Shown in pieces: positions 14,104 through 46,392 of a stretch of DNA of 64,000 bases. Under the pieces are notes generated by a model, which did not search any database, had not been told where the DNA came from, and was given only the letters and a program-made list of their open reading frames with translations. The stretch spans positions 185,876,001 to 185,940,000 of the forward strand of contig NC_083224.1 of assembly GCF_032191835.1 (NCBI RefSeq), in the 5' to 3' direction. Origin of the DNA: Heteronotia binoei. Lineage: Eukaryota. Position numbers and translations under genes: made by a program. Position 1 is the stretch's first letter. Every line of letters starts with the position of its first letter.

Positions 14104-14110
14104 TATAAAT
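14104..14110 (+). promoter_or_regulatory. TATA box of Pinhead
   Basis: TATAAAT about 45 nt upstream of the ATG (14154) of a signal-peptide exon that splices in phase to Pinhead exon 2. Confidence 0.7.
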
Positions 14111-14153
14111 AGCAAAGCGGTGCCTCTGAATTGGCAGCAACGAAGCTCCAGGT

Positions 14154-17100
14154 ATGGTGTTGATGATGATGATGTTCCTCTGGCTTTTCTGGATCTCCAC
14201 TTTTCCTGGTGAGGTTTCTTGCCTTGAACCGTGGGCAGTTAAGGGCTTCACAAACCATTAGCAGGCCACTGAGGTCACTGGATTTGACACAGGGTGGAGG
14301 AGAAAAGTTAAAATGGGAAGTTCCTTCTGCTCAACTCAGGTTTGGAATGTAACAAGATAGAATTAGATAAAGTCACCTATAATTTGGATGGGAGGAGGTA
14401 TTTAAAACAGAGGTCTAATGTTTGAGGGTTAGGGTTTTGGTTCAAATAAGCAATGCATGCCGGTTTGGCATTAGTTTGTGTTACTTGATTACTGTTTGTA
14501 ATCTGGGTTTCTTTAGGGGGGGGTTTCTTTTGGTGACTGGGTGGGTTTGATCTTGCCTGTATTCTGTATATGATTCTGTGTGTATCTCTGCATTTTGAAG
14601 TAAACTTGTTTGAATTACCATGTAAGAATTAGATCCAGGTGGGCAGCCGTGTTGGTCAGAAGCAATAGAACATGGTGGGAGTCCAGCAGCACCTTTAAGA
14701 CCAAGAAAGTTTTATTCAGAATGTAGGCTTTCGTATGCATGCACACTTCATCAGACAAAGGAACGGGGTACAGTGAGCAGTGCTACATATAGCTGGTGGG
14801 CAGTAGTTAAGCATGCAAAAAAGAACTACGTAACAATAAATTAAATTGAATATTTACTGTATATGTGCATTTACTAAATAAAGTGCTGAAATAGCTTAGT
14901 ATCTAAATTGCAATAATAACAATATAAATATCTATGTACCATTCTAATAATGAAGATTTAAAATGGGAGGGGGGGTTTACCTGTAGTGACGATTAATTTA
15001 AGAGGGACTCTCTAAATAAATTTGGAATGCTGTGGTCTATATAACATTGTTTTATGTCCTCCTCTGGATACCAATTTGATTAAGAGGGGACTTTAATGTT
15101 TGTATTATATTTTTTTAGATGGACTTACTTCTATGATTGATTGTTATTATTATTAGAATGATTATTAGAATGATTCTGTGCTTTTAAGAGCTGCCTCAAA
15201 GGCAGAGATTCAACAGGTTAAGTTTTCACTGTTCATCCTTCAGGTGTTTGCCGGGAAACAATGGAGCAATTGTTTTGACTTGCTGACCTAGCAAGTTGGA
15301 TGTTTTCATGCCAATTTGCATGCAAGAGGGTATTTTTTAAAGTTATTATTAATTCCCTGATGGTAGTAGAAACCAGTGTTCCCTCTAAGCAGAGTTAGTG
15401 TGAGTTAGCTCACAGTTTTTAGCCTCCAGCTCCCACATTTTTGTCTTAGCTCAGGAAAATATGGCCCCAGAGCAAGCTAATTCATGCAGTAACTCACAGC
15501 TTTAATGCCAGTGGCTCACAAAACAGAATTTTTGCTCACAAGATTCTACAGCTTAGAGGGAATATTGATAGAAACTACTGTCAAGTAAAGAGCCCTGTGG
15601 CACAGAGTGGTAAACTTGCAGTACTGCAGTCCTAAGCTCTGCTCACAACTAGGGATGTGCAAAAAAAAAAAATCAGAAGTACATGGATTCGGAAGTATAT
15701 GGGGGGAGGGAATACTACGGAATCCTATATATTTCTGAAATCCGTAGTCAGAATAGCCTCATATACGTTAGATGCACGGAGAGCCAGTTTGGTGTAGTGG
15801 TTAAGTGTGCGGATTCTTATCTGGGAGAACCGGGTTTGATTCCCCACTGCTCCACTTGCACCTGCTAGCATGGCCTTGGGTCAGCCATAGCTCTGGCAGA
15901 GGTTGTCCTTGAAAGGGCAGCTGCTGTGAGAGCCCTCTCCAGCCCCACCCACCTCACAGGGTGTCTGTTGTGGGGGAGGAAGGTAAAGGAGATTGTGAGC
16001 CGCTCTGAGACTCTTCGGAGTGGAGGGTGGGATATAAATCCAATATCTTCTATTTCCAAATATACGGCCCCATTATACCCTATGGGCCATTGAAATCAAT
16101 GGCAAATAGGGTATATTTGAAGCCGCCTGGAGGGGAGGGAGTTTGAGGGAGAGCCCCCAAATTTGCAGGGGACTCTCCCCTACAAACCCCCCAAGTCCCA
16201 AAAAGATTGGCCCAGGGGATCCCATTCCAGGGGCACCCAAAGAGGATGCCCCTATTCCACCATTATACCCTATGGGCCACTGAAATCAACGGCAACAGGG
16301 CATTATTAGAGGCTACTGGGGGGGCAGGGGGTTTGAGGGAGAGCCCCAAAAACTGCAGGGAACCCGCAGGGGACTCTCCCCTACAAAACCCCCAAGTCCC
16401 AAAAAGATTAGGCCAGGGGATCCCTGTCTTTGGGTTCCCCAAAAGGTCCATTGCCAACAATGATGGGGAAAGCCCAATTAGCCACTTCCTCCACTACAAT
16501 TGCTGTGGGGAAAGTGGCTCTGGCCAGAGGGGAGTTTGAGGGAGAGGCCCCAGAACTGCAGGGCAGCTTCAGAGGACTCCCCAGCATGAAACCCCCCAGG
16601 CCCAAAAAGACTGCACCCATCAGCGGGCACCCCAAAAGGAACATTGCTCCCAATGGTGAGAAAAAAACAATTAGAGCCACTTTCTCACTGTAATTGTCGT
16701 GGGAAGAGTGGCTCTGGGGAGCAAGAGGTTTTGAGGAGAGCCCCTCACACTGCTGTGCAGCTTCAGGGCACTGTCCCACACAAAACCCACAAGGCCAAAA
16801 AAAAAAATTGGACCAGGGGTTCCAATTCCTGGGGCACCCAAAGCCAAACCTAACTTCACACCAGAGAATCTCTATAGGACCCAAATGCACTACATCCCTC
16901 TATCTACTCTATGAACCCTGCAGGCCTGGAACCAATATAAACCCAGTTGCCAACATCACTGCCACACAAAACACAATCTGCTCAAGGTCTGCTCTGCAGA
17001 CAAGGCTGTAGCAAACCCAGATGCCAGCTCTCCAGCCCTGCCCCAAACAACATGGGGAGAGCTGGCCAACCACAACAAGCATGCCGGTTCTGGGTTTCTC

Positions 17101-20100: not shown

Positions 20101-23100
20101 CAATCCCGGCGGAAGCTGGGTTCAGGTAGCCAGCTCGAGGTTGACTCAGCCTTTCATCCTTCCAAGGTCGGTAAAATGAGTACCCAGCTTGCTGGAGGGA
20201 AAGCGTAGATGACTGGGGAAGGCAATAGCAAACCACCCCGTAAAAAAAGTCTGCTGTGAAAATGTTGTGAAAGCAACATCACCCCAGAATCAGAAACGAC
20301 TGGTGCTTGCACAGGGGGACTACCTTTACCTTTTTATTGTCAAGTAACAGCTGATTTGCGGTGACCCTGTGGGGTTTTTAAGGCAAGACATTTTCAGAGA
20401 TGGTTTGCCATTGCCTACCTCTGTAGATTTCCTTGGTGATCTCCCATCCCAGTCCTTAACCGGGACTGACCTTGCTTAACTTCCCAGATCGGAGGAGATG
20501 AAAACTAGCCTGGGCTATCCCAGCCAGGTCTATTATTATTCCCTCCCTGCTTCAAAAATAGAGCTAGAAGAGTCTTTCAAATTCCTAAGAGGCACAGAAT
20601 GTTTTTGCAGCCAGTGTCAATTCATAAAAAGAACCCTACAGGATCCAACCAAGGATTCATATGGTCCCGTGTCCTGTTTGTAATCTGCCAGCCAGGATGA
20701 TGGGAACGCCTCCCTTTTGGAATAAACTGGTACTTAAAGGTATGCTGCCTCTGAATGTGGAAGTTCCATTTGGCCGTCGTAATCACTAATAGGCCTCCTC
20801 CATGAGTTTATCTCTGAAAGTCACCCGTGCTGATAGCCACTGCGGCATCTTGTGTCAGAGAGTTCCGTAAGGAAATGACATCTTGTGTGAACAAGTGTTT
20901 TGTTTTGTCTCTTCTGCCAATCCCTTGCATTGGCTGACCCTGAATTCTAGTCACGCAGGGGAAACAAACAATTTCTCACCATAGAACAAAGTTGGAGTCC
21001 AGTGGCATCTAGACCGACGATGTTTTATGTAAGGTATGAGCTTTTGTGTGCACGCACACTTCCTCAGATATAGGGTTGCCAATCCCCAGGTGGGGGCAGG
21101 GGTTCCCCTGGTTTGGAGACCCTCCCCCCGCTTCAGGATCATCAGAAAGTGGGGCGGGGGTGGAGGGAAATGTCTGCTGGGCATTCCGTTATTCTCTAAG
21201 GAGACCGATTCCTAAAGGGTATAATGGAGAATTGATCCAGGGGTATCTGGAGCTCTGGGGGGGGGGGCTGTTCCTTGAGGTAGAGGCATCACATTTTCAG
21301 TATAGCATCCAATGCCTCTCCTCAAAACAGCCTCCAAGTTTCAAAAGGATTGGACCAGGGGGTCCAATTCTATGAGCCCCCAAAGAAGATGCCCCTATCC
21401 TTCATTATTTCCAATGGAGGGAAGGCATTTAAGAGGTGTGCTGTCCCTTTAAATGGGATGGCCAGTACTCCCTTTGGAGTTCAGTTATGCGTATCACACC
21501 CTTGCTCCTGGCTCCATCCCAGTGTCTCCTGGCTCCACCCCCAAAGTTTCCTGGCTCCACCCCCAAGATCCCAGATACTTCCTGAATTGGACTTGGCAAC
21601 CCTATTCAGATACAATGAAATAGATTAGTTCATGCAATTTGCATCTGTTAAAACATCTTCATTAAGTTGTATGCCAATTTACTGTTCAACCTCTGCCTTA
21701 TGTGTATGGACTGGTCAATTCCATTTTACGGTATCTGAGGAAATGCTCATGTACACGAGAGCTTATCCCTTGAATAAAACCCTGTTGATCTTAAAGGCGC
21801 CCCTGGACTCAAAACTTTGTTCTACTGCTTCAAACCAACACAGCTGCCCACCTGAATCTAATTTCTCACTGTGTTCTCCAACCCGCACTTAATTTTATGA
21901 ACCTCTTACTGTACGCGTACGTCTGTCCCTTTGTCTTTGACATTCTCTGCAATGTACCCGACGCTGCAAGCGCTGAAATCTGTCCCTCTTCCCCCCCCAG
22001 CCGTGGCGTCCGCTGGCCGATCACAAGAAGGGCGGAACCTCTTTGCCCAGCGAGGATGCTGCAAGCGCCAAACAAAGCACGTCTACATCGGACAGGGTGA
22101 GTCAAGACGAGAGGCCAGTTTTGATGTCAAAAGCCTGTGCTGAATTACATTTGCCGTTGCAAGATACACAGAACACGAAATCTCCTTCTGAATCTGGGTG
22201 TGAAGACTGCCTAGTTTGTGCAGCCTCAATATCTGTAGTTTCCTTTCGATTAGAATCGGGAGGAAAATCCTGCCTTGCGCAAGGGACATTCCCGGGGCAT
22301 CCCTTTTTAGATGCTAACGTTACTTCTAAGATAGTCCCATTCCTACCATTTGCCACAAGCTGGACAGCTTCAGAACTCAACAGCCAGTCCTCTGATCGCT
22401 GTGATCCCATTAAATTATTGTGTTGCTAGCTTTTGATTTTTTTAATATTTACTCATAGAGTTGCCAATCCCCTGGTGGGGGCAGGGAATCCCCTGGTTTG
22501 GAGGCCCTCCCCCCCACTTCAGGGTCATCAAAAAGCAAGGGGAAGAGAGGGAAATGTCTGCTGGGAACTCTATGATTCCCTATGGAGACTTATTCCCATA
22601 GGAAATAATGGAGAATTGATCTGTGGGTATCTGGGGCTCTGGATGGGGTTGTATTTTGAGGTAGGGGCATCAAACTTTCAGTATAGCATCTAGTACCTCT
22701 CCCCAAAATACCACCCCCAAGTTTCAAAGTGATTGGACCAGGGGGTCCAAGTTTATGAGCCCCAAAAGTAGGAGCCCCTATCCTTCATTATTTCCTATGG
22801 AAGGAAGGCATTTAAAAAGCTGTGTGGTCCCTTTAAATATGATGGCCCTTTGGAGTTCAGTAATGCTTTTCACACCCTTGATCTTGGCTCCACCCCCAAA
22901 GTCTCCTGGCTCCACTCCCAAAGTCCCCAGATTTTTCTTGAATTGGACTTGGCAACCCTATTTACTCATACGATTGTCAACTCTGGGATGGAAAACACCT
23001 GGAGATTTGTGGGGGTGGAGCTCGGGGAGGGAGGGATCTCAGTGGGTTAAGTCCACCTTCTTGGGTTGCCAACCTCCAGGCTGGTGACAGGAGAAAGCCC

Positions 23101-26100
23101 AAAGGTTCCGTGATAACCAGCCTCCAAAGAAGCAATAATACACTTATATAAACTTACAAAACAAACTTCTATAACATTCAAAACACTCTCAGACAAACCA
23201 TCTTATAAACATATCCTGATATACAGAACACCTAAAGTGAAAACAAAGGAAGGACATAGTCTTTGAAAGTTCATGATAAACAGTCCCACGTAGACGCTAA
23301 CAGGTCCTTCCACATTCAAAGGAATCCTCAGTCCAGTTGCTCCTGAGGAGACCCTGTAGTGTATCTGAATAGTTTCAATGCCAAATGTATTAAGCACACC
23401 GCGACGAGGCAGTACTTTGTATTCCTTTGTTTCGCTAGAAGCTTTGACCAGCTTTCAACAACTTTTATCGGAGCACGGCAAGATTTCAATTCTTTGCGCG
23501 CGGTTAAATTACAATTTCCCCAAAGTCTTGCCTTTGAACGTGGAAGGACTTGTTATCGCCGCCGCCTAGACAGAGGTTGGCAATCATACTGCAAACACCA
23601 GGGAAAAGTCAAATTTCATTCTTAGCTGAGGTGAGAAGAGAGTCATTTTGGCAGCTCTCTGCAAGCGACCTTACCCAGCATGAACTTTTGACGCTGCTGT
23701 GTCCTAGCCTTGCACAAGATCTCTACGCATGACCCCCACCTGGTGCAATGGGAGTCCCCCGCTCATGCTTTTGCGCACACACTCCTCCAAATCGGAATGT
23801 TTGCCTACATGGCTCTCAACAGATCATCTCCGATTTCCTCTTCCCTTCCTAATCTCAACCCCCACCTCTTGTTTCTGCAGGATTGCAGGCAGTCTCACAC
23901 CTTCCCTGGCCACAATGAACCTCCCCATTAAGGGGTGTTTCTGTGTTACTTCCTCAGCTATCCCACTGAAAGATCGGCCACTTCCCCTACTTGTAGGGGG
24001 ATGGTTAAAAATAACGACTAGGAAATCCGGGGGTGGGGGCAAATGCAGCATGTTGAGGCAACATAGCATCAACGCCACCATCATCTTTCAGGGAAGCTCC
24101 CCGCCCCAGCAAAGCAAAAGGCAAACAGCCCTTACCTGTTTGTTCCAACATCTTGCAATCAAAGGTAGACTGTCTTCCAACCTGGAGGTTCCGTTTAGTT
24201 GCAGAGGGCAGTCCGTGGGTCAATTGCGGTTACGAATTCTAAAGCTTTAATGCTGACAGCTGATCTCTAGCAAAGCTTAACTTAAGCCACGGAATGGAAT
24301 CTTGCACTGCGCTTCACCCAGAGTCACTTGTCCTTGCATTCGATGCAGCTTTGCTTGCAAGCTCCATGGGCTTAATTAGTGTTCAGTGAAGTCAACAATG
24401 CATCCTCAGTTTACGCCCTTCCTTTCTTCTCCTGATCTGTAGGGGTCACCTGATTGTTTCCCCAATCTCCTCTCCCTCTGTACATCTCATCCTTTCTGTA
24501 AGAAATACATATAGGAATGAAATTCTTTCTAACCCAAATGATGGTATTTAGGGAAAACTAGGAATCAACGAGGAGGCGATAGTCCCATTAGGTTTAACAT
24601 TTTCCCCGCTTGCAGAGGGAGAGGACTGGGCCTCCAAGAGAAAGTCTGAGTTGAATCCTGAGTGTCTGCCAAGTTCTGCCTCTAGTCTTAAAATGATTGC
24701 AGGGCTTACTTGACATCTGTTTGGTGCAGTGGTTAAGTGTGCGGACTCTTATCTGGGAGAACCGGGTTTGATTCCCCACTCCTCCACTTGCAGCTGCTGG
24801 AATGGCCTCGGGTCAGCCATAACTCTCATAGTTGTCCTTAAAGGGCAGCTGCTGTAAGAACTCTCTCAGCTCCACCCATCACACAGGGTGTCTGTTGTGG
24901 GGGGTGGGGGAGGTAAAAGGAGATTGTGACCACTCTGAGATTCAGAGTATAGGGTGGGAAATAAATTCAATTCTTCTTCTTTTCTCTTTGAGGCCCTAGA
25001 GGAAGCAGGGAGAATGTCATTTTTGACAGCATCTGTGAGCTTTGCTAAAATTACAAAATTGCTTTCTGCATCTGCCCTTCACCCCCCCCCCCCGCCAGAT
25101 GTCTCTGGTAGTCCGGCGAGCATTGATGTTGGCACGTGCCGGACCCATTGTGGGGGTTCCCAGAGGATGACATCCTACATTGCGGGAGTCCTTGGCCTCT
25201 CCAGACCATCCTCTATGCTGGAATTCCTTAAAACTAAGAAGGTAAGGATGACAGGTTCTGTTCACAAACATAGCCCACACGGAATATCATTCTATTGGGG
25301 GTACAGTGGAGAAACATTGATGGTGGGATACAAGAGAGTCAAGTTTTTAATCCCTTCTCTCTGAAACTTCTAACAAGAGAGAGGGCCAGATCCATATCTG
25401 CTTCCTTTTTCAGGTAGGAAACAGATGAGGCATGGGGTGGTAGAACTCTGAAATCACCGTGGATCTACTAAAATTACCTGACGGTAGATTTAGGGCAGAC
25501 ATTGTGGAACTCACTGCTGGAAGAAACAGCAATAATCATTAGTATGAAGAGGAAATACACAAATTCATGGAGGAGGAAGAGAATCCTGTAGCTGTTCCTT
25601 TCCTTTTATCTGCTTAAAGCTCTAGAATACATCGATCTTGAACAGTGAATAGTTGTTATTGGTCATTTATCACCAAATAGACAAAAGGAGTAAAAAAAAG
25701 TGTTTTTGCAGCTGCTAGAGTTCTTTCAGATCCCTGTCAGCAAATAGATATGCAAAAATAGTGAAATATAACACCTGAGATTAGCAAACAAAGGACACTC
25801 CAGAAGGATATCTGCAATTGTGTCAATCTTGCCTAGGGCTTTTTTTGTAGAAAAAACCCAGCAGGAGCTTATTTGCATATTAGGCCCTGACATCACCATT
25901 TTTTACACAGGCCTTTTCCTACCACACACAGAGAGAGAAAGAGAGAGAGAATGCACAGAAACTCAGTTCTGGCTAGCTTGGCATCAGGGGGTGTGGCCTA
26001 ATACGCAAATAAGTTCCTGCTGGGCTTTAACATATCAGGTCACACCCCCTGATGTCCAGCCAGCCGGAACTGAATTCCTCTGCGTTCCTGCTCAAAAGAA

Positions 26101-32100: not shown

Positions 32101-34576
32101 ATAAAATGAAGTGACCCCACCACCACTGTGACCTTTATGGCCCAGACTAGCCTCATAAGATTTATAGTTGGGATTTTTGGCCCCAACATACATTACTTTG
32201 CACTTGGCCATGTTGAACCTCATTTGCCATGTTGCTGCCCACTTGCCCAGCCTCGACAGATCCCTTTGGAGTGCCTCTCTGGTTCTCACCGCCCTGAACA
32301 ATTCAGTGTCATCCACAAACTTAGCCACTTCACAGCTTACTCCCAACTCCAAATAATTAATGAACAAGTTAAAAAAGCATCAGACCCAGTACTGCGCCCT
32401 GTGGTACCCTACTGCTTACCACCCTCCACTGCAAAAATTGCCCATTTATACTCACTCTCCGCTTCCTATTAATTAGCCAGTTTTTGATCCACAAGAGGAC
32501 TTGTCCTTTTACCCCATTAGATCTTGAAAGCTAAGCTGGGTTAACTGTGGTTAGTATTTGGATGGGAGACCATTAAGGAAATCCAGGGTGGCTGTGCAGA
32601 GAAAGGCAACGACAAACCCTCCTCCATTTGTCCCTTGCCTTCAAAACCCTGTGGCTTCAACTTAATGGCACTTTCTGCCATCTTCCTCTGGACAATAAAA
32701 AAGGGTGCACGATTAGATGTAGTTAAAGGTAAAGGAAGTCCCCTGTGCAAGCACCAGTCGTTTTTGACTCTGGGGTGACGTATTTTCATGGCAGACTTTT
32801 TATGGGGTGGTTTGCCATTGCTTTCCCCAGTCATCTAAACTTTCCCCCCAGCAAGCTGGATACTCATTTGACCGACCTCGGAAGGATGGAAGGCTGAGTC
32901 AACCTGGAGCTGGCTACCTGAAAACCCTGCTTCCACTGGGGATCGAACTCAGGTCATGAGCAGAGGGCTCTGACTACAGTACTGCAGCTTTACCACTCTG
33001 CACCATGGGGCTTTTTTAGATGTAGTTAATTAGATGTAGTTATGTATAGAAGACACACAACCACTGCTTCGTGGGCCAAAATGCATTTCCAGTGTATATG
33101 CCAGAAAATTGTATTTTTAGGAGGAAAAGTATGAATGTCGGAGGTCCTGTCCCCACATGCACATGCGCACACACACACACAGAGTAGGAGGATGTTAACA
33201 TCATTCCCCTATTATTTGCAAACGGTTGTGTATTGGGTGTTGATCTTTCTCCCGGTGTCCCTCCTTCTTCCCCACCCCAAGTGACAGACCAGCATAGAAA
33301 AGCCTCAAGTACCTGTGACATTCGAAAATGCACCTGGAGAAAGACTGTGAGAGTTAAGTTCATTCCCAGCCGCTCTGCCCACCTGGTGCCGTAGAGCAGA
33401 TATCCAGTGCTGGATTTATCCCTTTGCCAATATTGGAGGGGCACAAAGCCAGGGATAAAGGAGCTACCGAGGTCTACGCCCTCCCAAGCTGGAGGCATTC
33501 AGAGGTAGACTGCCCCTGAATATGAAGGTTCTGTTTGGTGATGGTGGGATGTAGGTAGGTTTATCCATAAGAATAACCCTGAAGGATCAAACCAAGTTTT
33601 CTTCTCCATGTCTATAGGCAGCGTAACCTCCTGAATGGTGGACCTGCAAGACATAAACATGAACATCAGATGTTTGAGAACATCAGATGTTTGAGAGCTG
33701 CAAGATAGGAAGGAAGGGAGGGAGGGAGGGAGGGAGGAAGGAAAGCAAATAGATGGGGAGAGGTGGAAAGAAAGCAACTTACTTCAAATGCATTCTCCAA
33801 ACTGCCAGCTGGCTTGGCTTGAAGAAGTGATTTAAAGAGAGAAATGCCTTCTCCAAGCCAGCCAACGAGGCAGTGGGGGCTTCAAGAGTCACACAATATG
33901 TGCGAAAGAACCACATGTGGCTCCCGAGCCCCAGTTTGGTCACCCAATTCAGGATTTGCTTGTATGGAGCCTTGTGGGGTAGGCCGGAATTTTTCATTCA
34001 GATGCACACGTTGAGCAGAAAAAAGAATGCCAGTAAAAAAAAAAAACCTCTGCATACATTAGAAGTCACAGGAACACATGAAGCCGCCTGAACGCTACGT
34101 CAAACCATTGCGCCAAACATTTAATTAGCTTTATAGTTCTTACAACAGCTATATAATGTAGGGCGACACACAACAACCCTGTAAAGTAGGACAACACAAC
34201 AACCCAGTAAGGTAGGACAACACAACAACCCAGTAAGGTAGGACAACACAACAACCCAGTAAGGTAGGACAACACAACAACCCAGTAAGGTAGGATGATG
34301 TTATCCCTGTAGTTCAGATGGAAGAAAGCCGCTTGGCAAAACTATTTATTGTATTCATAACTGAGACAAGGATGGGATTAGTTTGCAAGCCAACCAACGC
34401 TGCATTCTCTTCTTTTCCAACTCAGGGATTCCCACGCTCCGGACAAGTGCCTATTTTTGACAGAGGGCGTCTTCACCCGTTGCATCCCACGGCAGTATGA
34501 GACTCATACTTTCCGAAGCCGGAGTGGCCAGCTGCGCACTGTCTTCTCAATCCAGGCCTGCAAGTGCGATGTCTGA
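14154..34576 (+). CDS. pnhd: Pinhead, secreted cystine-knot repeat protein, 7 exons, 317 aa
   Basis: Exons 14154-14208, 22001-22096, 25099-25241, 26999-27266 (alternative in-frame acceptor 27005), 28895-29076, 30638-30696, 34426-34576. All GT-AG with matching phases (1,1,0,1,0,2); 954 nt. Signal peptide MVLMMMMFLWLFWISTFPAVASA, 20 Cys, three IDVGxC repeats (IDVGTC, IDVGKC, IDVGRC), C-terminus RCIPRQYETHTFRSRSGQLRTVFSIQACKCDV*. The architecture and position directly upstream of ADMP match Pinhead. Confidence 0.9.
15781..16052 (+). mobile_element. tRNA-derived SINE (gecko-type family); other copies ~6725-6993(-), 7058-7283(-), 7495-7720(+), 24719-24982(+), 35003-35272(-)
   Basis: Head AGCCAGTTTGGTGTAGTGGTTAAG...GGTTTGATTCCCC, shared body CACCTCACAGGGTGTCTGTTGTGGG, tail of TCT repeats. 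Confidence 0.8.
16068..16830. repeat. ~190 bp subterminal repeats of the hAT element
   Basis: CCATTATACCCTATGGGCCA...GGGACTCTCCCCTACAAA...GATT(G/A)GCC block at ~16070 and ~16258, with more diverged copies to ~16830. Confidence 0.7.
17019..17299. repeat. 123 bp tandem repeat (~2.3 copies) inside the hAT element
   Basis: Unit starts AGATGCCAGCTCTCCAGCCCTGCCCCAAAC at 17019, 17142 and 17265. Confidence 0.9.
18770..19770 (-). pseudogene. C-terminal part of hAT (Ac/ZBED-like) transposase with two frameshifts
   Basis: LIGDVSTRWNSTCAMLERMVEQR, ATMLDPRLKG, and dimerisation domain WPALSSVAKAFLSCPPTSVQSERVFS...VEQLVFLKVN, spread over three frames (19721-19488, 19518-19048, 19054-18770). Confidence 0.9.
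23295..23558. repeat. 28 bp inverted repeat pair in Pinhead intron 2
   Basis: CGCTAACAGGTCCTTCCACATTCAAAGG (23295-23322) vs reverse complement of 23531-23558 (CGATAACAAGTCCTTCCACGTTCAAAGG): 3 mismatches. Confidence 0.8.
31348..31520. other. Assembly gap (N run)
   Basis: 173 N, adjoining a MITE. Confidence 1.
32150..32518 (-). mobile_element. CR1 LINE reverse-transcriptase fragment
   Basis: LFNLFINYLELGVSCEVAKFVDDTEL...LQRDLSRLGKWAATWQMRFNMAKCKVM is a CR1 RT segment (FADDT-like). Confidence 0.85.
32725..33015 (-). mobile_element. Sauria SINE
   Basis: Reverse-complement copy with 12 bp TSD TTAGATGTAGTT (32713-32724, 33016-33027). Confidence 0.88.
34166..34295. repeat. 26 bp minisatellite (~4.5 copies) in Pinhead intron 6
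   Basis: Unit GTAAGGTAGGACAACACAACAACCCA. Confidence 0.9.
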
Positions 34577-34696
34577 AGAGGCATTTTTGTCTTCCCAGAA
34601 ACTGGAATCTTGCAACTGAAACGGGGGTACAGACTGCAAGCCGAGGGAGGGAGCAACGTGTACGATATGTAAATGAGAGACCATGGCGATTGTGTA

Positions 34697-34702
34697 AATA
34701 AA
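34697..34702 (+). terminator. Polyadenylation signal of Pinhead
   Basis: AATAAA about 120 nt after the stop codon at 34574-34576. Confidence 0.65.
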
Positions 34703-35809: not shown

Positions 35810-36357
35810 CTGGCACGACTTTTGGCAATGGAAGTCTCCAGCTGTTGCATCGCACACCAGTATGAGACTCATAGGCTGAAATCAGATGTCCAGCTCAGGG
35901 CGGCATCAAGCTGGCCTGGAAGAAAGCCGGCCGGTAATAGAGCACCTGGGAGTGTCCCGGCAGCACTCAGGAGAGGGACGAGCTGCAGGCACCCCAGGGA
36001 GCGTCTGGAGTGCTCACACACTCCACCCGCAGCTCCCCTGGCACTCCCTGAGTGCTTCCTGGCCTTCCAGACGGCTGGGGAGGCGCCCTAGTGAAAAGAC
36101 ACCACTTTGAAAGTGCTGCCTTTTTGAGCCGGCTCCCGGCAAGCCAGAGGCAACTCAGAGAGGGGGCGGGACGGGGACGGCAGACAGATGTGTGCATGTG
36201 GACAACCTTTTTTGATCCACCTGCCTCCTGTCCCCGGGGCAGCTCAAACTGTCCATCTGTTATCATATGCTTTCTAAAGCTGGAGTGGCCATTTGCGCAC
36301 TCTCTTCTCAATCCAGGCTTGCAAGTGTGACATCTGAAGAGGCATTTTAGAAAGTGG
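35810..36357 (+). pseudogene. Degenerate duplicate of Pinhead last exon, split by a ~390 bp insertion
   Basis: 35812-35873 (...GTTGCATCGCACACCAGTATGAGACTCATA) matches 34451-34508. 36269-36357 (TTTCTAAAGCTGGAGTGGCCATTTGCGCACTCTCTTCTCAATCCAGGCTTGCAAGTGTGACATCTGAAGAGGCATTTT) matches 34509-34600. The second part reads AF*SWSGHLRTLFSIQACKCDI*, with CGA>TAA at 36275-36277. Confidence 0.85.
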
Positions 36358-38296: not shown

Positions 38297-38667
38297 NNNN
38301 NNNNNNNNNNNNNNNNNNNNNNNNNNNNNNNNNNNNNNNNNNNNNNNNNNNNNNNNNNNNNNNNNNNNNNNNNNNNNNNNNNNNNNNNNNNNNNNNNNNN
38401 NNNNNNNNNNNNNNNNNNNNNNNNNNNNNNNNNNNNNNNNNNNNNNNNNNNNNNNNNNNNNNNNNNNNNNNNNNNNNNNNNNNNNNNNNNNNNNNNNNNN
38501 NNNNNNNNNNNNNNNNNNNNNNNNNNNNNNNNNNNNNNNNNNNNNNNNNNNNNNNNNNNNNNNNNNNNNNNNNNNNNNNNNNNNNNNNNNNNNNNNNNNN
38601 NNNNNNNNNNNNNNNNNNNNNNNNNNNNNNNNNNNNNNNNNNNNNNNNNNNNNNNNNNNNNNNNNNN
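38297..38667. other. Assembly gap (N run) in the pnhd-admp spacer
   Basis: 371 N inside a MITE. Confidence 1.
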
Positions 38668-40358
38668 GGTGGAAAGAAAGCAACTTTAACTTTATCTGCA
38701 TTTTCCAAGCTGCCAGCTGGCTTGGCAAAGTGATTTAAAGAGAGAAATGCCTTCTCTAAGCCAGCCAATGGGGTGGTGAGGGCTTCGAGAGCCATACAAT
38801 GTGTGAAAGAGCCACACGTGGCTTTTGAGCCACAGTTTTGCCACCTCTGGTATAAGCTTTTATGTGCATGCTGTCAGGGATGTTGCTGATATTCTCCTTC
38901 CCTGGAATCTAAATCTTGGAATGGTGGGGTGGGATGAGAGTGGATCGATCTTGTTTCTTGTGCACACACGTATGCATGCAAAGATCCAGCACATCGAACC
39001 CCTGTGCATTTCAGAGGCTGGCAAGGTACCTTTTGAATTTGGGATCGTCAACACCTTCTTAGTTCCTGTTTCCAAAATCAATCAATACCATATATAGCAG
39101 ATAGAACAGAGCTTTCAGTCAGGAGAAAATGGGGGCAGGGAGGCAGACAGTTTGCATTTGTGAAATGTTGGTGGATACGACCAGCCAGCTAGCAACACAC
39201 ACACACTTTTTGTGAAAACATAATGCTCCAATGTGCCCTTGTTCCATCTCAAAAATGAACAAAAATAAGAGTATCTTCATGTTGCTCTAATAAATATCTC
39301 CCATGCAGATATTATGTATTTTTTTTTTTTTTGCTCTTATGCACGTAAGTATTGTCAAGTCACAAGGAATTTATGGCAACCCCAGAAAGGGGCTTTCAAG
39401 GCAACTGATCGCCTTTCTTTGGCGATCTCCCATCCAAGAATAAACCCTGTTTAGCTTCTGAGATATGAAGTGATCCTGCCCCCCTTACCTTTCTGCTCTT
39501 AGTAAGATGTATTGGTGAAAAAAAACCTTTTCCTTTTTTAAAATATATTTGTTATTTGTTTGTCTGTGTGTAACATTGGGTAAACACGTGAAGCGGAGGT
39601 TCATCAGTAGCTATTAGCTACAAGGTATAGGTGGAACACTCGGGGCAGTGACGCTTTGTATTCTTGGCGTTTGCAGGGGGCAACAGTGGGAGGGCTTCTG
39701 GAGTTCTAGCCCCACTGGTGGACCTCCTGATGGCACCTGGGCTTTGGCCACTGTATAGCACGGAGCGTTGGACTGAATGGGACATTGGCCTGATCCAGCA
39801 TGGCATCTCAAGATTACAATAACTCTCCTGCAAAAGAGTTATTGTAATCTTGCAGGATTGAGGGGGCTGGAAGATCAGGAATTTCTGTGGTGTTCTCCTC
39901 CAAAGTACCTGGTGCTCCAGTGGGCTTCTTGGATGTTGATTCCTTGGGGGCTGCCCTGCCTCCTGCCATTTGTCTCAATCCGCTTTATTCGCCCCTGCAA
40001 AAACGTCTCCTGTTTGCCCCATTAGGCCCGCCATTAGAAGCCCGTTAGCCTCCTAAGGAGGGCAAACAGCACTCTTTGCAATCCATTGCCACCGAATAAA
40101 CCTGGCGTATGTCGGAGGGGGCGGACACCTGCCAAATCCCCCTCTCCTTCCTGTCAGCCCCAGGTTCTTCAGTTCTTTGCCATGGGGAGGGGGGGCAGTA
40201 AATACACAAGAGCCCTCCAGCTTGTGGACTGGCCCTAACGGGACCCATTTAGCACCTAGTTAGCGCCACAATTAGCTCTCTTTACCCTTCCTGATTGTTT
40301 CTTGGGGGAGGGGGAGTTAAGGCCTACTTGGTTCCCCTCATTTCAGTGCTGTTTTGGC

Positions 40359-40365
40359 TATAAAT
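40359..40365 (+). promoter_or_regulatory. TATA box of ADMP
   Basis: TATAAAT about 60 nt upstream of the ATG at 40425 (context GCCATGG). Confidence 0.7.
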
Positions 40366-40424
40366 TTAGCTGTCAGGCAGGGAGAGTTGAGTCGGTGTGG
40401 AGGAACCTGAGGGAAACAAGAGCC

Positions 40425-43400
40425 ATGGCCCTTTCTCGACTTCTGCTGTGTTTCCTCCTCGCCTGGGTGCCAGCCTGCTCCGCCCGACCCTCCCAGGCCC
40501 ACCTGGCAGCGGGCAGCTCTGAGGACCAGCGAGCGGAGGCCCTCAAGAGACTCTTGCAAGTCTTCGGCATTATGGACATCCCCCAGTCCCCTCATGGGAT
40601 CAAAGAGCCCCCTCAGTACATGGTGGATCTCTACAACACGGTGGCTGGGGCTGATGGGGTCACCAAAGACCCAGATATCTTGGAAGGGAACACGGTGCGC
40701 AGCTTTTTGGACAAATGTGAGTATCGCCACTCTGGCAGGGACAGCGTAGAGATGAGAGGCTGGTTGCAAATTATGCTTTCTTGGGCAGCCCAAAGGAGGG
40801 GGAAGAGCCTACCAGAGAAAGTCCTCCTTGTTTCATTGATTTTATTTTATTTATTCACCATATTCCACCCCTCGCTCCCTCACGTCCTGCTCTCATACAT
40901 CTTACATTCATATCTTGCGTCTCTCAAACACCTGACATGTATTTTGTGCATCTTTTATATTAAGCAAGTTTGGCCACCCCTGGTTTAGTCTAACAAATGT
41001 ATTGACAAACGGGCACTCTTCGTGAGGTAATGGAATGGTGAATTTCAAATGGTGAATTTCAAATATCTTATTTCCATTGTTGCGAATGCTGCGTCTTGTT
41101 GTTTATATCCCCATATAACTTTTAAATGTAAAAACGAAAAGCGCTCAGTCTTGGGGCTGACTTAAGGGAGATTTGTGACTTGCAATCTAAGAATGAGTCC
41201 GTTATAAATGCATTGCTGGGGGTGGGAAGATTGTTCAGTGGCTAAAAAAACCTGAGCCTCCACATTCAGAGGCAATATATCTCAAACTCTGAAGATCAAT
41301 TCTGTGGGAGGAAGTATGGGAAAGAGCCAATGCTAAACTAAACAAATAACTAAAGAAATATCCTGTTTGGCTTTCCTGGGGGACATGTGGGTTGCTACAG
41401 TCAAAGACAGGATGCTGAGCCTGCTGGATCAGACTTTAGTTTCTGACTCCATAGTGCCTTCCAGTAGCCTCAAGACTCTTAGGGGCTTCAGGCTTGCCAG
41501 CCTCCAGGTGGGGCCTGGAGATCTCCCACTTTTACAACTGATCTCCAGCTGGCAGAGATCAGCTCCCCCGGAGAAAATGGCTGCTTTGAAGGGTGGGCTC
41601 TGTGACATTGTACCGTGCTGAGCCCCTTTCCTCCTCAAACCCGCCCTCTCCCAGATCCACTCCCAATATCTCCAGGTGTTTTCCAACCCAGACCTGGCAA
41701 GTGGCAACCCTATTCAGATCTGATTTCAGGCTGCAATTCTGGACTGCATAAGGAAGCAATCCATTTGAATCCCATTTTCAGTTCTTTCTGCAGGAACATC
41801 TGTGCTGTGTGACCGAGCTAGCCAAAGTTTGTGTAGGCATTTATCTATGCATTTTTAGATATACCATGGTGGGCGGGTGGGTGGATCGATTCAGACATGA
41901 GAATTCCCAGTCTGAGAGCTGCCCTCAGAGCAGTCTAGAAAGCCCTGAGGAATGTTGATTGAGAAGGCTGCCACATATATTAACCTCCTTCCTGGACTGA
42001 CTTTTAAGAGAAGTGCCTTTTCTTTCAAAATCCACAGGCTGTGAAAACGTCTGGGAGGAACAGATTAAGGCTGGGATTGAATGTCCTCCAGTCATTTTAT
42101 CTTATCAGGTGCCAACCTCCTGGTGGAGCCTGGAAATCTCCCACTTTTACAGCCGATCTCCGGACAACAGAGTTGTTAGTCACATTTCTCTCGGAGCTGT
42201 TATCTCAAGAGCAGTTTCTGTCAGAGCTCTCAGCCCCACTTACAGAGTGACTGTTGTGCGGAGGGGAAGGAGATTGTAAACTGCTCTGAGACTCGGAGCG
42301 AAGGGTGTGGTATAAATCCAATCTCCTCCTCTTCTTCTTCCTCTTCTTCCTCCTCCTCCTTCTGGCTAAAGGAATTTGTAGGCCAAAAATTTGTAGTCCT
42401 TTTCAGCCCTGGCCCCTGCCTGGTGGAATGAACTCCCCCTGGAGATCCGGGCCCTGCAGGATTTACTTCAATTCCGCAAGGCCTGTAAAACAGAGCTCTT
42501 TCGCCAGGCTTTCAGCTGAGGCAGCGGACGTCACTTGTTATTGGCCTCCCCCCTTTCATTCCATCTCAGTGCTGTAGAACCTGCTGGACCTGGACAATAG
42601 GTCATGTCTGTGAGACAGAATTTGCCATGTTAGTCTCTATTGTTATTCTGTAATTTGAGATTTTATAAATATTAATTGTTTTTAATTGTTGATTGTTTTT
42701 ACGATGTAACCGGCCCTGAGCCTGTTCTACGGGAAGGGTGGGCTAAAAACTGAATAAACTAAATAAATAAATACAAAAATTAAAAAAGGGCCATGAGAAA
42801 GTACCAGTTCACACCAATAACCACGACTGCTTTGCATTGCAGTCCACAGCAGCCAGATGCATTTCCTGTTCATCCTGTCCAGCGTTGCCAAGAACGAGCA
42901 GGTGCTGACAGCTGAACTGCACCTGTTCAAATTGCGGGGCAGGCCGAGCAATGGGCCCCTCAGCAGGCATCACTTCTGCCAGGTAAAAATGCTCGCCTTC
43001 AGCCTGCCTTCATGAGGTCTAGCCACTTGGGAAAGGGTTCTGTTACGATTTATCCTGTATGAGTAGGGTTGCCAATCCCCAGGTGGGGCAGGGGATCCCC
43101 CGGTTTGGAGGCCCTCCCCCCGCTTCAGGGTCGTCAGAAAGCGGGGGGAGGGGAGGGAAATGTCTGCTGGGGACTCTATTATTCCCTATGGCGATTTATT
43201 CCCATAGAAGATCATGGAGAATTGATCCGTGGGTATCTGGGGCTCTGGGGGGAGCTGTTTTTTGGGGTAGAGGCACCAAATTTTCAGTATAGCATCTAGT
43301 GCCTCTCCCCAAAATATCCACCAAGTTTCAAAAAGATTGGACCCGGGGGTCCAATTCTATGAGCCCCAAAAGAAGGTGCCCCTATCCTTCATTATTTCCT

Positions 43401-46392
43401 ATGGAAGGAAGGCATTGAAAAGGTGTGCCGTCCCTTTAAATGTGATGGCCAGAACTCCCTTTGGAGTTCAATGATGTTTGTCACAGCCTTGATCTTGGCT
43501 CCACCCCTCCTGTCTCCTGGTTCATTAGCACAACTCATTTGCATATGCCACGCACTCCTGACATCACCAGAAGGTGTACTAAATTATATCAACTCAGCAT
43601 CTGCCTTAAAATGCTTCTTGAATTATAATTGTCATCATCAAACCTTACTCCCATCATACTTTTGAAATGACTTTCTTCTGTGTGGCCACAGTGGAATGAT
43701 GAAGATTTCCATCTGCTTTATATGTTTTGATTAATTCCCCCCCCCCCACTTTTATTTTTTTGGACGGAAAAATATTAGAAAGTTTGTCAAATGTTAGAAT
43801 TCAGCAAAATTCTCACAAGGGCTTTGAACAATAGCACTTAGAAGCAAAAAAAAAAAATTGGGGGAGGGGGGGGTTAAGAAAGAAAACACAATAAAATTTA
43901 GAGGTGTAAGCTCCTGCCCAAAATGAGGCCTGAACCTACCCAAGTCATTAATGAGATATTGCAGCCAAAAGCTGTGTATTTACTTGAGCTAATGACTCTG
44001 ACCTCAGATTTTCAAAGTATCACAATCAGTGTTCCCTCTAAGCTTAGTTAGTGTGAGCTAACTCACAGTTTTTTAGTCTCCAGCTCACACATTTTTGTCT
44101 TAGCTCAAGGAAAAATGGCCCCAGAGCAAGCTAATTTATGCAGTAGCTCACAGCTTTAAAGCCAGCAGCTCCCAAAGTAGAATTTTTGCTCACAAGACCC
44201 TACAGCTTAGAGGGAGTATTGATCACAATAATGGTCCATTTGGGATGTTGGTTACTTAGCCCTGGACTCATTCTCTTCTAGGTTAGCGTGTACCAAGTCC
44301 TGGACCAGCAGAACCTGGACTCCCCAGAGGGAAAGAAACTGCTCTCTGCCAGATTACTTGCTGTGCATGGATATGGCTGGGAAGTCTTCAGCATCACACA
44401 AGCGGTGAGTTGATTGATAGCCTGCCTTATAGGGCTGTTGTAAGGACTGCAAAAAGATCATTGAGCCGGTGGTCATTTTTAGGCAAACATCACCAGCTTC
44501 ATGTGGCATTCCAGGTTCGCGACTGGACAGAAGAGGAAAGCAGCAACCACGGCTTGCTGGTGACTGTGCAGGGTCTTGGCGGAGCAGTGCTGGAACCCGG
44601 CGCTGTGCAGTTTGCTTCTGGACGAGATCACCACGAGAGCAAGAAACCAATGCTGGTTTTGTTCACCGATGATGGACGGCGGGGAGCAGCGTTGCCCACA
44701 AGCCCTTTTTCAGGTGAGGGGGGTGTCTTTTGCCATCCGTCTTCAGGTGTAATCCCCTGCCCATTAGCAGCAAAATGGAAGCCACCTGTTTTTAAATCTG
44801 GAGTGAATGGCTACAATCAGGGCTTCTTTTTTGGTGGAAAAAGCCCAGCAGGAACTCATTTGTATATTAGGCCACACTCCCTGGTGCCAAGCCAGCTGGA
44901 ACTGTGTTCCTGTGCATTCCTGCTCAAAAAAGCCCTGGCTACATTACTCTAAAAGCACATAGCAAATAAAAACACTGGGGAGAATGCAGAAAACCAGACG
45001 TTACGTGGAATGTGGGATGAATGTGCATCCTCGCTATGGGCCACAGAGGAAAGGACAGAAGGTTTTCTACTATCAAGGGCACAATCTGAGATTTGTCAAC
45101 ATTTATTGTTTGAGGACAAAGCAGAAATCTTTATTGGCCTTCGGGATTTGGTTGCCGATTCCGACTGGGAAATTCCTGGAAATTTGGGGATGGGGCCTGG
45201 GGAGGACAAGGACCTCAGTGGGGAATAAGGCCACAGAACCCACCCTCCAAAGCAGCCGTTTTCTCCAGGGGAACTGATCTCTGCAATCCTAGGATCAGTT
45301 GTAATTCCTGGAGATCTCTCCCCCTCTCCAGCTAATAATCCTTCCAATGGACTTGCTTACTACGTCATCCTCGGCCCTTTCCAACTCTATGATTCTAGGC
45401 ACCTTTCTCAGACGTAAGTCCTATTTTATTCACTGAGGCTTATTCCTAGGGAAATATTTCTGGAATTGCAAGCTTAAAATGTTCTTAGGGATGGTGTGAA
45501 CAGGGCTCTTTTTCTAGCAGGAGCTCCTCTACATATTAGGCCACGCGCAAAATCCATTCTGTAATATACACTGTCATTTGAGGGGGGTCGAGGCCCAATT
45601 TCCCTCTAAGCTGTGGAGTCTTGTGAGCAGAAATTCTACTTTGTGAGCTGCTAGCATGAAGGTTGTGAGCTGCTGCATAAATTAGTCTGCTCTGGGGCCA
45701 TTCTTCCTTAGCTAAGACAAAAAATGTATGAGCCAGAGGCTAAAAAACTGAACTAGCTCACACTAACTCAGCTTAGAGGGAACACTGGTTGGGGTTTCAA
45801 TACATCTGGGATCTCTACCCTTCTTCTCCACAGAGCTGGCCTCACTTTGGCCTCATGGATACGCCAAAACCACATTTTACAATTACAGTATCTGAGCATT
45901 AACAACTTGCCAGGCTAAAAAAACTCCTTTGCTGGTTCACAATCTTCGCTTTGATTCTAACTCTGATCTTTCCTTTCCTTAGATTTAGCCCTGCAGAACC
46001 CGGCCCTTCCCGTGGAAGTAGGAATCCCTCAAAGCAACAGGACACGGGCCCCACGCTCAGCAGATGAGCAGCGGCTGCCTTGCCAGTTACGCCCGCTTTT
46101 GGTAGACTTTGAGGAGATCGGATGGAACGGCTGGATCATCTCTCCCCGCGGGTACAACGCCTTCCACTGCAGGGGTTCCTGCCCCTTCCCACTGGGGGAG
46201 AACATGCGGCCCACCAACCACGCCACTGTCCAGTCCATCATTAATGCGCTGAAGCTCAGTCAGGACGTCAGTGGGCCCTGCTGTGTGCCCGATAAACTCT
46301 ATTCCATCAATCTGCTCTATTTCGATGACGATGAAAATGTGGTCTTGAAGCAGTACGACGACATGGTGGCTGGGAGCTGTGGCTGTCATTGA
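40425..46392 (+). CDS. admp: Anti-dorsalizing morphogenetic protein (TGF-beta/BMP family), 5 exons, 387 aa
   Basis: Exons 40425-40716, 42843-42982, 44282-44404, 44515-44713, 45983-46392; GT-AG, phases 1,0,0,1; 1164 nt. Signal peptide MALSRLLLCFLLAWVPACSA, prodomain PPQYMVDLY/EGNTVRSF, furin-type RAPR at 46045-46056. The 7-Cys mature domain VDFEEIGWNGWIISPRGYNAFHCRGSCPFPLGENMRPTNHATVQSIINALKL..PCCVPDKLYSINLLYFDDDENVVLKQYDDMVAGSCGCH is ADMP-specific. Confidence 0.95.

What the first reader, a model, noticed from the sequence alone, without database searches (positions are those of the whole stretch)
14104..46392. Intact Pinhead-ADMP tandem cassette in a squamate: a BMP-family ligand and its partner wired in cis
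Seen: a complete 7-exon, 317 aa secreted triple cystine-knot gene followed head-to-tail, 5.85 kb from stop to ATG, by a complete 5-exon ADMP. Both have TATA boxes and neither has a stop or frameshift. Established: Pinhead and Admp sit in tandem from arthropods to vertebrates; in Ciona, Pinhead protein antagonises Admp and Pinhead transcription blocks the Admp enhancer in cis; competition for shared regulation was reported in zebrafish, and functional interaction in Xenopus; eutherian mammals lack both genes. Inference: the dual protein-level and cis-transcriptional switch may operate in reptile gastrulation, where to my knowledge it is uncharacterised. The 55 nt first exon 7.8 kb upstream is easily missed by annotation, so the gene may be mis-modelled or labelled uncharacterised.
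Basis: partly seen in the sequence, partly recalled or inferred. Interest (0 to 1): 0.85.

Follow-up and report, generated by a model that had tools for sequence, protein, structure and literature searches.

The report
Gecko Pinhead–ADMP gene pair, intact
This stretch of a gecko genome carries the intact, already annotated Pinhead and ADMP genes side by side, as in fish, frogs and birds, so it is a correct but ordinary finding.

Summary
A 7-exon, 317-aa secreted, Cys-rich gene (14154-34576, +) is followed 5,848 nt downstream on the same strand by a 5-exon, 387-aa TGF-beta gene (40425-46392). All splice sites are GT-AG, there is no stop or frameshift, and each gene has a TATA box. Both assembly gaps are non-coding: one in Pinhead intron 6, one in the spacer.

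The upstream protein is a one-to-one Pinhead orthologue: 53% identical over its full length to Xenopus pinhead.L, and nested among geckos in the tree. The downstream protein is ADMP: 66% identical to Xenopus admp.S and 62% to zebrafish Admp.

The window is Heteronotia binoei. My ADMP model is 100% identical to its public protein, named "BMP2-like". The same annotation already calls a 317-aa gene ending exactly at 34576. So both genes are annotated here, only uninformatively named.

POLE4→Pinhead→ADMP is conserved in three other geckos/lizards, a snake and an alligator. The pair is under purifying selection (dN/dS 0.2 and 0.12). The tandem is published for animals from arthropods to birds.

The proposed cis-transcriptional switch in reptiles stays untested, because no RNA data were obtainable. 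One small addition: two short ADMP-proximal elements are conserved across sauropsids.

The parts
14009..14113 (+). Pinhead core promoter with TATA box (TATAAA 14104-14109)
   Evidence: About 90% identical over 105 nt to Eublepharis L001 14770-14872. The TATA box and the upstream block are invariant in three geckos.
14154..14208 (+). Pinhead exon 1 (55 nt, signal peptide MVLMMMMFLWLFWISTFP, phase 1)
   Evidence: A homologous exon with an ATG and a GT donor is present in Eublepharis and Gekko kuhli. The Gekko kuhli and Paroedura proteins start with it.
22001..22096 (+). Pinhead exon 2
   Evidence: tblastn to L001 and L002.
25099..25241 (+). Pinhead exon 3
26999..27266 (+). Pinhead exon 4 (largest exon; used as search query)
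   Evidence: 104 homologues at E<=1e-3.
28895..29076 (+). Pinhead exon 5
30638..30696 (+). Pinhead exon 6 (59 nt, EIDVGRCLGGC motif)
   Evidence: Conserved to alligator and Xenopus.
31348..31520 (.). Assembly gap inside Pinhead intron 6 (non-coding)
   Evidence: Flanked by colinear gecko blocks. The protein alignment is gapless across exons 6 and 7.
34426..34576 (+). Pinhead exon 7 with stop codon (…ACKCDV*)
   Evidence: The public annotation's 317-aa gene ends at this base.
34697..34702 (+). AATAAA, likely Pinhead poly(A) signal, 121 nt after the stop
   Evidence: It is the only canonical signal within 2 kb.
38297..38667 (.). Assembly gap in the Pinhead-ADMP spacer (non-coding)
   Evidence: Colinear blocks lie on both sides versus Eublepharis.
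40042..40054 (+). ADMP-proximal conserved element A (CNGTTAGNCNCCT), -383 from the ATG
   Evidence: Occurs once, at the syntenic place, in all 6 sauropsid loci and is absent from zebrafish and Xenopus.
40252..40263 (+). ADMP-proximal conserved element B (GCACCTNGTTAG), -173 from the ATG
   Evidence: The A-to-B spacing is 197-240 nt in all six loci.
40359..40364 (+). ADMP TATA box
   Evidence: TATAAATTT is invariant in three geckos.
40425..40716 (+). ADMP exon 1 (signal peptide and start of propeptide)
   Evidence: Pfam TGFb_propeptide.
42843..42982 (+). ADMP exon 2
44282..44404 (+). ADMP exon 3
44515..44713 (+). ADMP exon 4
45983..46392 (+). ADMP exon 5 (RAPR cleavage site, mature TGF-beta domain, stop)
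   Evidence: Pfam TGF_beta E 1.4e-34. BMP-2 chains in the PDB match at E 5e-37. The whole model is 100% identical to P0212.

Best explanation
This is the orthologous pnhd-admp locus of Bynoe's gecko (Heteronotia binoei), flanked upstream by POLE4.

Shown here: both genes are intact, under purifying selection, and in the ancestral head-to-tail order.

Pinhead is a secreted protein built of three homologous cystine-knot-like modules, each with an IDVGxC motif. Its C-terminal module resembles DAN-family BMP antagonists.

ADMP is a standard BMP-type proprotein with a signal peptide, a propeptide, an RXXR site and a 7-Cys mature domain.

Inferred from orthology with Xenopus and Ciona: Pinhead is secreted at gastrulation and binds ADMP, tuning Smad1 signalling along the organiser-to-ventral/posterior axis. 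ADMP is driven by a proximal promoter-enhancer in the last ~420 bp of the spacer, where two short elements are conserved across sauropsids.

Whether Pinhead transcription also silences ADMP in cis in reptiles is possible but not shown.
For: The gene models are complete with canonical splicing.

Pinhead is 53% identical over 320 columns to Xenopus laevis pinhead.L (E 1e-121) and 82% to Gekko kuhli. In the tree it sits in geckos (99*), squamates (100*) and then the other vertebrate Pinheads.

ADMP is 100% identical to the H. binoei protein P0212, 66% to Xenopus admp.S and 62% to Danio Admp. Its tree follows the species tree.

The annotation of the same assembly has a 317-aa gene ending at 34576.

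POLE4→Pnhd→ADMP lies on one strand in Eublepharis, Gekko kuhli, Pantherophis, Alligator and Lacerta. In zebrafish the last Pinhead exon ends about 2.5 kb before the admp ATG.

dN/dS is 0.19-0.31 for Pinhead and 0.12 for ADMP.

The AF2 model has pLDDT 79. Its best structural matches are Gremlin-1 (Z 6.8) and NBL1 (Z 6.6) on residues 181-313. The three modules are homologous to each other (hhalign probabilities 91-93%).

The proximal ADMP elements are conserved to alligator.

Literature: Pnhd binds and inhibits Admp in Xenopus, and the genes are adjacent in lower vertebrates and birds but lost in mammals (PMC8188501). They are in tandem in zebrafish (PMC6989304).
Against: No expression data for this or any gecko could be obtained, so timing, place and the exon 1-2 junction rest on comparative gene models only.

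The complex prediction gave no verdict.

The structural Z-scores are middling (below 8). Pinhead matches no Pfam family.

ADMP2 and BMP2/4 were not in the ADMP tree as outgroups.

Zebrafish work describes Pinhead as a BMP-like agonist redundant with Admp rather than an antagonist (PMC6989304, PMC8034876).
Confidence: 0.9

Rival explanations
1. The Ciona-type cis switch operates here: Pinhead transcription, or its active promoter, blocks the ADMP enhancer on the same chromosome. The tandem would then be kept because of this coupling.
For: The head-to-tail order with a short spacer (2.5-9 kb) is kept in every sauropsid locus examined and in zebrafish. The only non-coding elements conserved beyond geckos lie just downstream of the Pinhead unit, in the ADMP proximal region. 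From memory of the abstract, which is not held in the library, Imai et al. 2012 proposed that the mechanism is widely conserved.
Against: Nothing in the sequence tests it. POLE4 is conserved in the same block too, so linkage may simply reflect slow rearrangement. Within 10 kb, X. laevis pinhead.L has no admp and admp.S has no pinhead. In zebrafish short proximal promoters reproduce each gene's pattern on their own (PMC6989304). In Xenopus, Pnhd raised rather than lowered admp transcription when Chordin was present (PMC8188501).
Confidence: 0.3
2. The tandem is passive conserved synteny. Each gene is run by its own proximal enhancer, and they are coupled only in trans through BMP/Smad feedback (the zebrafish 'seesaw').
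For: Zebrafish -633 admp and -431 pinhead promoter fragments suffice for correct expression and bind Smad1 (PMC6989304). In the gecko both promoters carry conserved proximal blocks. The rest of the spacer is not conserved, even between gecko and snake.
Against: The zebrafish Smad1/5 core GGCGCC is absent from both gecko proximal promoters. Conservation of orientation and closeness over more than 400 million years is more than most neighbouring genes show.
Confidence: 0.5
3. Gecko Pinhead acts as a BMP-like agonist, redundant with ADMP and promoting Chordin degradation, rather than as an ADMP antagonist.
For: This is the zebrafish genetics: the double mutant is strongly dorsalised while single mutants are mild (PMC6989304, PMC8034876). 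The modules have the growth-factor cystine-knot fold.
Against: Xenopus biochemistry shows binding and inhibition of Admp. Pnhd is not furin-processed and is structurally unlike BMPs (PMC8188501). The best structural matches of the C-terminal module are BMP antagonists, not ligands.
Confidence: 0.3
4. One or both genes are decaying relics on their way to loss, as happened in mammals.
For: Mammals lost both genes (PMC8188501, PMC3296468). Snake Pinhead sits on a long branch (0.71 changes per site).
Against: The reading frames and all 22 splice sites are intact. All 20 Pinhead Cys and 7 ADMP Cys are kept. dN/dS is 0.12-0.31. TATA promoters are conserved.
Confidence: 0.03

Closest known systems
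Xenopus pnhd / admp (Kenwrick 2004; Itoh, Ossipova & Sokol 2021, PMC8188501)
   Same: One-to-one orthologues, at 53% and 66% identity over the full length. They share the length, the signal peptide, the Cys framework and the 5 ADMP coding exons.
   Different: No functional data exist for any reptile. In X. laevis the retained homeologues examined (pinhead.L, admp.S) have no partner within 10 kb, whereas the gecko pair is 5.85 kb apart.
Ciona Pinhead-Admp tandem with cis-acting repression (Imai et al. 2012, Science 337:964)
   Same: Head-to-tail tandem of a secreted cystine-knot gene followed by Admp.
   Different: The cis mechanism and the position of the enhancer are unknown in the gecko. The Ciona sequences were not compared here, and the paper is not held in the library.
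Zebrafish pinhead-admp 'seesaw' (Yan et al. 2019, PMC6989304)
   Same: Tandem order, confirmed here. The conserved regulatory sequence upstream of admp is proximal.
   Different: The zebrafish Smad1/5 GGCGCC element is not present in the gecko proximal promoters. Sauropsid elements A and B are not found in zebrafish.
DAN-family BMP antagonists (Gremlin-1, NBL1) and CTCK domains
   Same: The cystine-knot fold of the C-terminal module (Z 6.6-6.8). They are secreted and act on BMP-type ligands.
   Different: There is no Pfam DAN or Cys_knot hit at E<=1. Pinhead has three tandem modules, and the middle one lacks the C-x-C motif.

Membership tests
Pinhead (pnhd) | Full-length colinear similarity to experimentally named Pinhead proteins | tested here: met
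   53% identity with residues 1-317 aligned to 1-319 of X. laevis pinhead.L (E 1e-121). 51% to Latimeria and 50% to Lepisosteus 'Pinhead'.
Pinhead (pnhd) | Clusters with Pinhead orthologues in a tree that follows the species tree | tested here: met
   geckos 99*, squamates 100*, then archosaurs, amphibians and fishes. Invertebrate pinhead-like proteins fall outside.
Pinhead (pnhd) | Secreted protein with multiple cystine-knot modules and a conserved Cys framework | tested here: met
   The N-terminus is hydrophobic. 16 Cys are invariant and 3 more nearly invariant across 44 orthologues. The three modules are homologous. All top structural matches are cystine-knot folds. Signal-peptide cleavage was not predicted with a dedicated tool.
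Pinhead (pnhd) | Lies immediately upstream of admp on the same strand | tested here: met
   (5,848 nt). The same holds in 5 other sauropsids and in zebrafish.
Pinhead (pnhd) | Binds ADMP | tested here: inconclusive
   The complex prediction gave no verdict, which is evidence neither way.
Pinhead (pnhd) | Zygotic expression at gastrulation, complementary to admp | not testable with these tools
   No RNA run was listed. The laid reads covered only repeats.
ADMP (ADMP1) | TGF-beta propeptide plus mature TGF_beta domain, RXXR site and 7 Cys | tested here: met
   PF00688 E 2.3e-27 and PF00019 E 1.3e-33 on the identical protein P0212. RAPR site and 7 Cys.
ADMP (ADMP1) | Groups with named Admp of Xenopus, zebrafish and coelacanth | tested here: met
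   66%, 62% and 70% identity. The tree follows the species tree.
ADMP (ADMP1) | Separated from the paralogues ADMP2, BMP2 and BMP4 in a joint tree | not tested
   No ADMP2 or BMP2/4 full-length sequence was retrieved. Assignment to ADMP1 rests on named orthologues and on synteny with Pinhead.
ADMP (ADMP1) | Gene structure shared with admp of other vertebrates | tested here: met
   Five coding blocks with matching boundaries occur in Danio (L008) and X. laevis admp.S (L009).
DAN family (PF03045) | Match to the Pfam DAN or Cys_knot profile | tested here: not met
   No Pfam family at E<=1 for gecko, Xenopus or Saccoglossus Pinhead.
DAN family (PF03045) | DAN-like fold | tested here: inconclusive
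   Gremlin-1 Z 6.8 and NBL1 Z 6.6 are the top rows but lie below the Z 8 level the tool regards as clear.
Ciona-type cis-repression module | Head-to-tail tandem on one strand | tested here: met
Ciona-type cis-repression module | The Admp enhancer is disturbed by Pinhead transcription, giving mutually exclusive expression | not testable with these tools
   This needs embryo expression, nascent-RNA or deletion data.

The most novel reading that the evidence does not exclude
The sauropsid-wide ADMP proximal elements A and B (-383 and -173) form the organiser/node enhancer of ADMP. In amniote embryos they are silenced in cis when the upstream Pinhead unit is transcribed. The arthropod-to-vertebrate tandem would then be held together by transcriptional interference even in amniotes with a blastoderm-type gastrulation.
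Probability: 0.2. Interest if true: 0.5.

Novelty: already known. Interest (0 to 1): 0.15.

Why it matters
The finding has little importance as a discovery. The Pinhead-Admp tandem is published from arthropods to birds, and both genes are already called in this genome's public annotation.

It has some practical value:

- Every sauropsid Pinhead is labelled 'uncharacterized protein', and every sauropsid ADMP is labelled 'BMP2-like', 'BMP2B' or 'BMP4'. Both could be renamed.
- About half of the sauropsid Pinhead models inspected lack the signal-peptide exon, and some bird models are fused to POLE4.
- Intact, selectively constrained Pinhead genes in squamates, crocodilians and birds contradict the remark that no pinhead homologue is found in birds (PMC6989304).
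- The two ADMP-proximal elements give a concrete handle for reporter tests in chick or gecko embryos.

Tried and rejected
- RNA evidence. No RNA run holds Pinhead exon 4. For ADMP exon 5, only relatives' runs with 10% or less of the words were listed. Laying four of them on 40400-46399 gave depth only over intronic repeats, two or three short contigs over exon 5, and no exon joints. This was uninformative.
- Complex prediction of Gekko kuhli Pinhead (29-313) with ADMP mature domain: score 0.00, no verdict. This is not evidence either way.
- Foldseek against the PDB gave no match at E<=1e-3, although all the better rows are cystine-knot growth factors.
- Pfam found nothing for Pinhead, either as exon pieces or as full-length orthologues. 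The ESM Atlas gave only 'hypothetical protein' clusters, with DAN/CTCK families at lead level.
- The Smad1/5 core GGCGCC occurs 11 times in the window, but not in either proximal promoter.
- A search for deep non-coding conservation in the spacer and introns found none beyond geckos, apart from the ADMP-proximal region. The gecko-only blocks (about 20.5-20.95 kb, 23.76-24.53 kb and 33.2-33.58 kb) are 72-85% identical, against a neutral expectation near 65-72%. I did not treat them as established enhancers.
Imai et al. 2012 is not held in the library.
- The spliced 317-aa protein could not be handed to the search tools by reference. I therefore used exon 4, close orthologues and the Gekko kuhli protein as proxies.
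Full report
**Observation.** I rebuilt both genes from the raw sequence.

The upstream gene has seven exons on the + strand: 14154-14208, 22001-22096, 25099-25241, 26999-27266, 28895-29076, 30638-30696 and 34426-34576. They total 954 nt, encoding 317 aa with 20 Cys. Every intron is GT..AG with a polypyrimidine tract.

The downstream gene has five exons: 40425-40716, 42843-42982, 44282-44404, 44515-44713 and 45983-46392. It encodes 387 aa with a signal peptide, a propeptide, an RAPR furin site and a seven-Cys mature domain. Pinhead's stop and ADMP's ATG are 5,848 nt apart.

TATAAA boxes sit at 14104 and 40359. A single AATAAA lies 121 nt after the Pinhead stop.

**Assembly gaps.** The gap at 31348-31520 falls in Pinhead intron 6, and the gap at 38297-38667 falls in the intergenic spacer. 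Three things argue against a lost exon or a misjoin:

- The protein aligns without a single gap to Gekko kuhli Pinhead over 312 columns.
- Exons 6 and 7 are each found in other species.
- Orthologous blocks in Eublepharis and Gekko flank both gaps in the same order and orientation.

**Identity of the upstream gene.** Exon 4 alone found 104 homologues in the representative library. The spliced model aligns end to end with them. Named relatives include:

- Saccoglossus 'pinhead-like protein';
- Xenopus laevis 'pinhead L homeolog';
- Latimeria and Lepisosteus 'Pinhead';
- several fish 'pnhd'.

Identity is 53% over the full length to Xenopus pinhead.L (E 1e-121) and 80-86% to gecko proteins. In a maximum-likelihood tree the model sits inside geckos (99*), inside squamates (100*), next to archosaurs, and then amphibians and fishes. 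The tree is therefore the species tree of one orthologous gene.

**Identity of the downstream gene.** The last exon carries a TGF_beta domain (E 1.4e-34) and matches BMP-2, -3, -6 and -7 chains in the PDB. Searches seeded with a king-cobra fused gene model and with Latimeria ADMP returned the sauropsid proteins together with named Admp of Xenopus, zebrafish and many fishes.

My model is 100% identical over 387/387 residues to P0212, the Heteronotia binoei protein named 'bone morphogenetic protein 2-like'. It is 66% identical to Xenopus admp.S and 62% to zebrafish Admp. Its tree also follows the species tree. The five-exon structure recurs in zebrafish and Xenopus admp.

ADMP2 and BMP2/4 were not available as outgroups. 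Assignment to ADMP1 therefore rests on the named orthologues and on synteny.

**Source genome and existing annotation.** The window is H. binoei (assembly GCA_032191835.1). In that assembly's gene table a + strand gene with a 317-residue product ends at the base corresponding to window 34576, followed by the 387-aa gene. Both genes are thus already annotated with the same models.

The names are what is poor. All sauropsid Pinheads are 'uncharacterized protein LOC…', and all sauropsid ADMPs are 'BMP2-like', 'BMP2B' or 'BMP4'. Pinhead matches no Pfam family, which explains its label.

Eublepharis, Euleptes, Gekko japonicus, Lacerta, Zootoca and Alligator models lack the signal-peptide exon. Yet the homologous exon with an ATG and a donor site is present in Eublepharis DNA. 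Several bird models are fused to the upstream POLE4.

**Synteny and selection.** POLE4→Pinhead→ADMP lies on one strand in all five other sauropsids examined. The Pinhead-ADMP spacers are:

| Species | Spacer |
|---|---|
| Eublepharis | 3.9 kb |
| Gekko kuhli | 3.1 kb |
| Pantherophis | 3.7 kb |
| Lacerta | 7.0 kb |
| Alligator | 9.1 kb |

In zebrafish the last Pinhead exon ends about 2.5 kb before the admp ATG. In X. laevis neither pinhead.L nor admp.S has its partner within 10 kb.

dN/dS is 0.19-0.21 for Pinhead against geckos and 0.31 against a snake, where dS is saturated. It is 0.12 for ADMP. Both genes are therefore functional.

**Protein anatomy.** An AlphaFold2 model of the Gekko kuhli orthologue (82% identical to the window's protein) has mean pLDDT 79, with disordered linkers at residues 69-107. 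Foldseek gave only weak matches, and the better ones were cystine-knot growth factors.

The exhaustive aligner ranked Gremlin-1 (Z 6.8) and NBL1 (Z 6.6) first on residues 181-313. TGF-beta2, VEGF-B and Noggin matched residues 107-219. These Z values are middling, but the fold class is consistent.

Profile-profile comparison of three segments shows that they are homologous. B versus C has probability 93%, A versus B 91%, and A versus C E 1e-3 over the full module. Each segment carries an IDVGxC motif. 'Triple cystine-knot' is therefore a fair description, although the middle module lacks the C-x-C.

**Regulatory sequence.** Among geckos both promoters are conserved. Beyond geckos the only non-coding conservation is upstream of ADMP:

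- element A, CNGTTAGNCNCCT, at 40042 (-383 from the ATG);
- element B, GCACCTNGTTAG, at 40252 (-173 from the ATG).

Each occurs once, in the same order and 197-240 nt apart, in all six sauropsid loci. Neither occurs in zebrafish or Xenopus. This parallels the proximal admp enhancer (-633 to -210) mapped in zebrafish (PMC6989304). However, the zebrafish Smad core GGCGCC is absent from both gecko promoters. The rest of the spacer is repeat-rich and unconserved.

**Mechanism and literature.** Published work says that:

- Pnhd binds and inhibits Admp in Xenopus, and the genes are neighbours in lower vertebrates and birds but lost in mammals (PMC8188501);
- they are in tandem in zebrafish, where they repress each other through BMP/Smad sites in their own enhancers and act redundantly (PMC6989304, PMC8034876);
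- ADMP1 and ADMP2 were lost in early mammals (PMC3296468).

Consistent with the mammalian loss, I saw no mammalian protein among the listed hits.

The Ciona cis-repression paper (Imai 2012) is not held in the library. I know it from its abstract and from the citing papers. By orthology the gecko pair most likely works as in Xenopus. The cis switch is possible but untested, and I found no paper on Pinhead in reptiles.

No RNA evidence could be obtained, and the complex prediction gave no verdict.

**Verdict.** The feature is an ordinary, already annotated instance of a published conserved gene pair.

Noticed in passing
window 5152-9600 (+): POLE4 (histone-fold protein, DNA polymerase epsilon subunit 4) lies just upstream of Pinhead. 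Exon 1 begins MAAMAGADGAPP…. POLE4→Pinhead→ADMP is conserved in geckos, Lacerta, snake and alligator. Several bird gene models fuse POLE4 to Pinhead and are named 'DNA polymerase epsilon subunit 4'.
   Followed up: partly
L001 10001 (Eublepharis), homologous to window ~10340: The Eublepharis RefSeq Pinhead model starts 80 bp after the end of POLE4, with a non-signal first exon (MEDPLMPARPTV…). This may reflect POLE4 read-through transcripts spliced into Pinhead exon 2. The homologous window sequence has no matching ORF.
   Followed up: partly
window 14154-14177: An (ATG)n microsatellite inside the signal peptide gives MVLMMMMF. It is a 12-nt insertion relative to Eublepharis and Gekko kuhli.
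   Followed up: partly
Pinhead tree, snake clade (P0106, P0121, P0180): Snake Pinhead sits on a long stem branch (0.71 changes per site). It is only about 50% identical to gecko Pinhead, while snake ADMP is about 73% identical to gecko ADMP. Pinhead evolution may be accelerated in snakes.
   Followed up: no
L007 and L009 (Xenopus laevis): pinhead.L has no admp within 10 kb downstream, and admp.S has no pinhead within 10 kb upstream. Either the Xenopus spacer is longer, or the homeologues were lost reciprocally.
   Followed up: no
P0198 (Ophiophagus hannah): A king-cobra gene model fuses Pinhead exon 4 with ADMP exons 2-4. This is an annotation artefact of the tandem.
   Followed up: partly
window 17018-17299 and 34168-34295: Tandem repeats: a 123-nt unit x2.3 in Pinhead intron 1, and a 26-nt unit x4.9 just before exon 7. 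In addition, SINE-like repeats are scattered through the introns and the spacer; these attracted nearly all of the reads laid.
   Followed up: no
window 57592-61549 (-): Another first-stage note reports an unrecognised minus-strand multi-exon gene converging on ADMP. The public gene table calls nothing between 46392 and 56392. I did not examine the region further.
   Followed up: no
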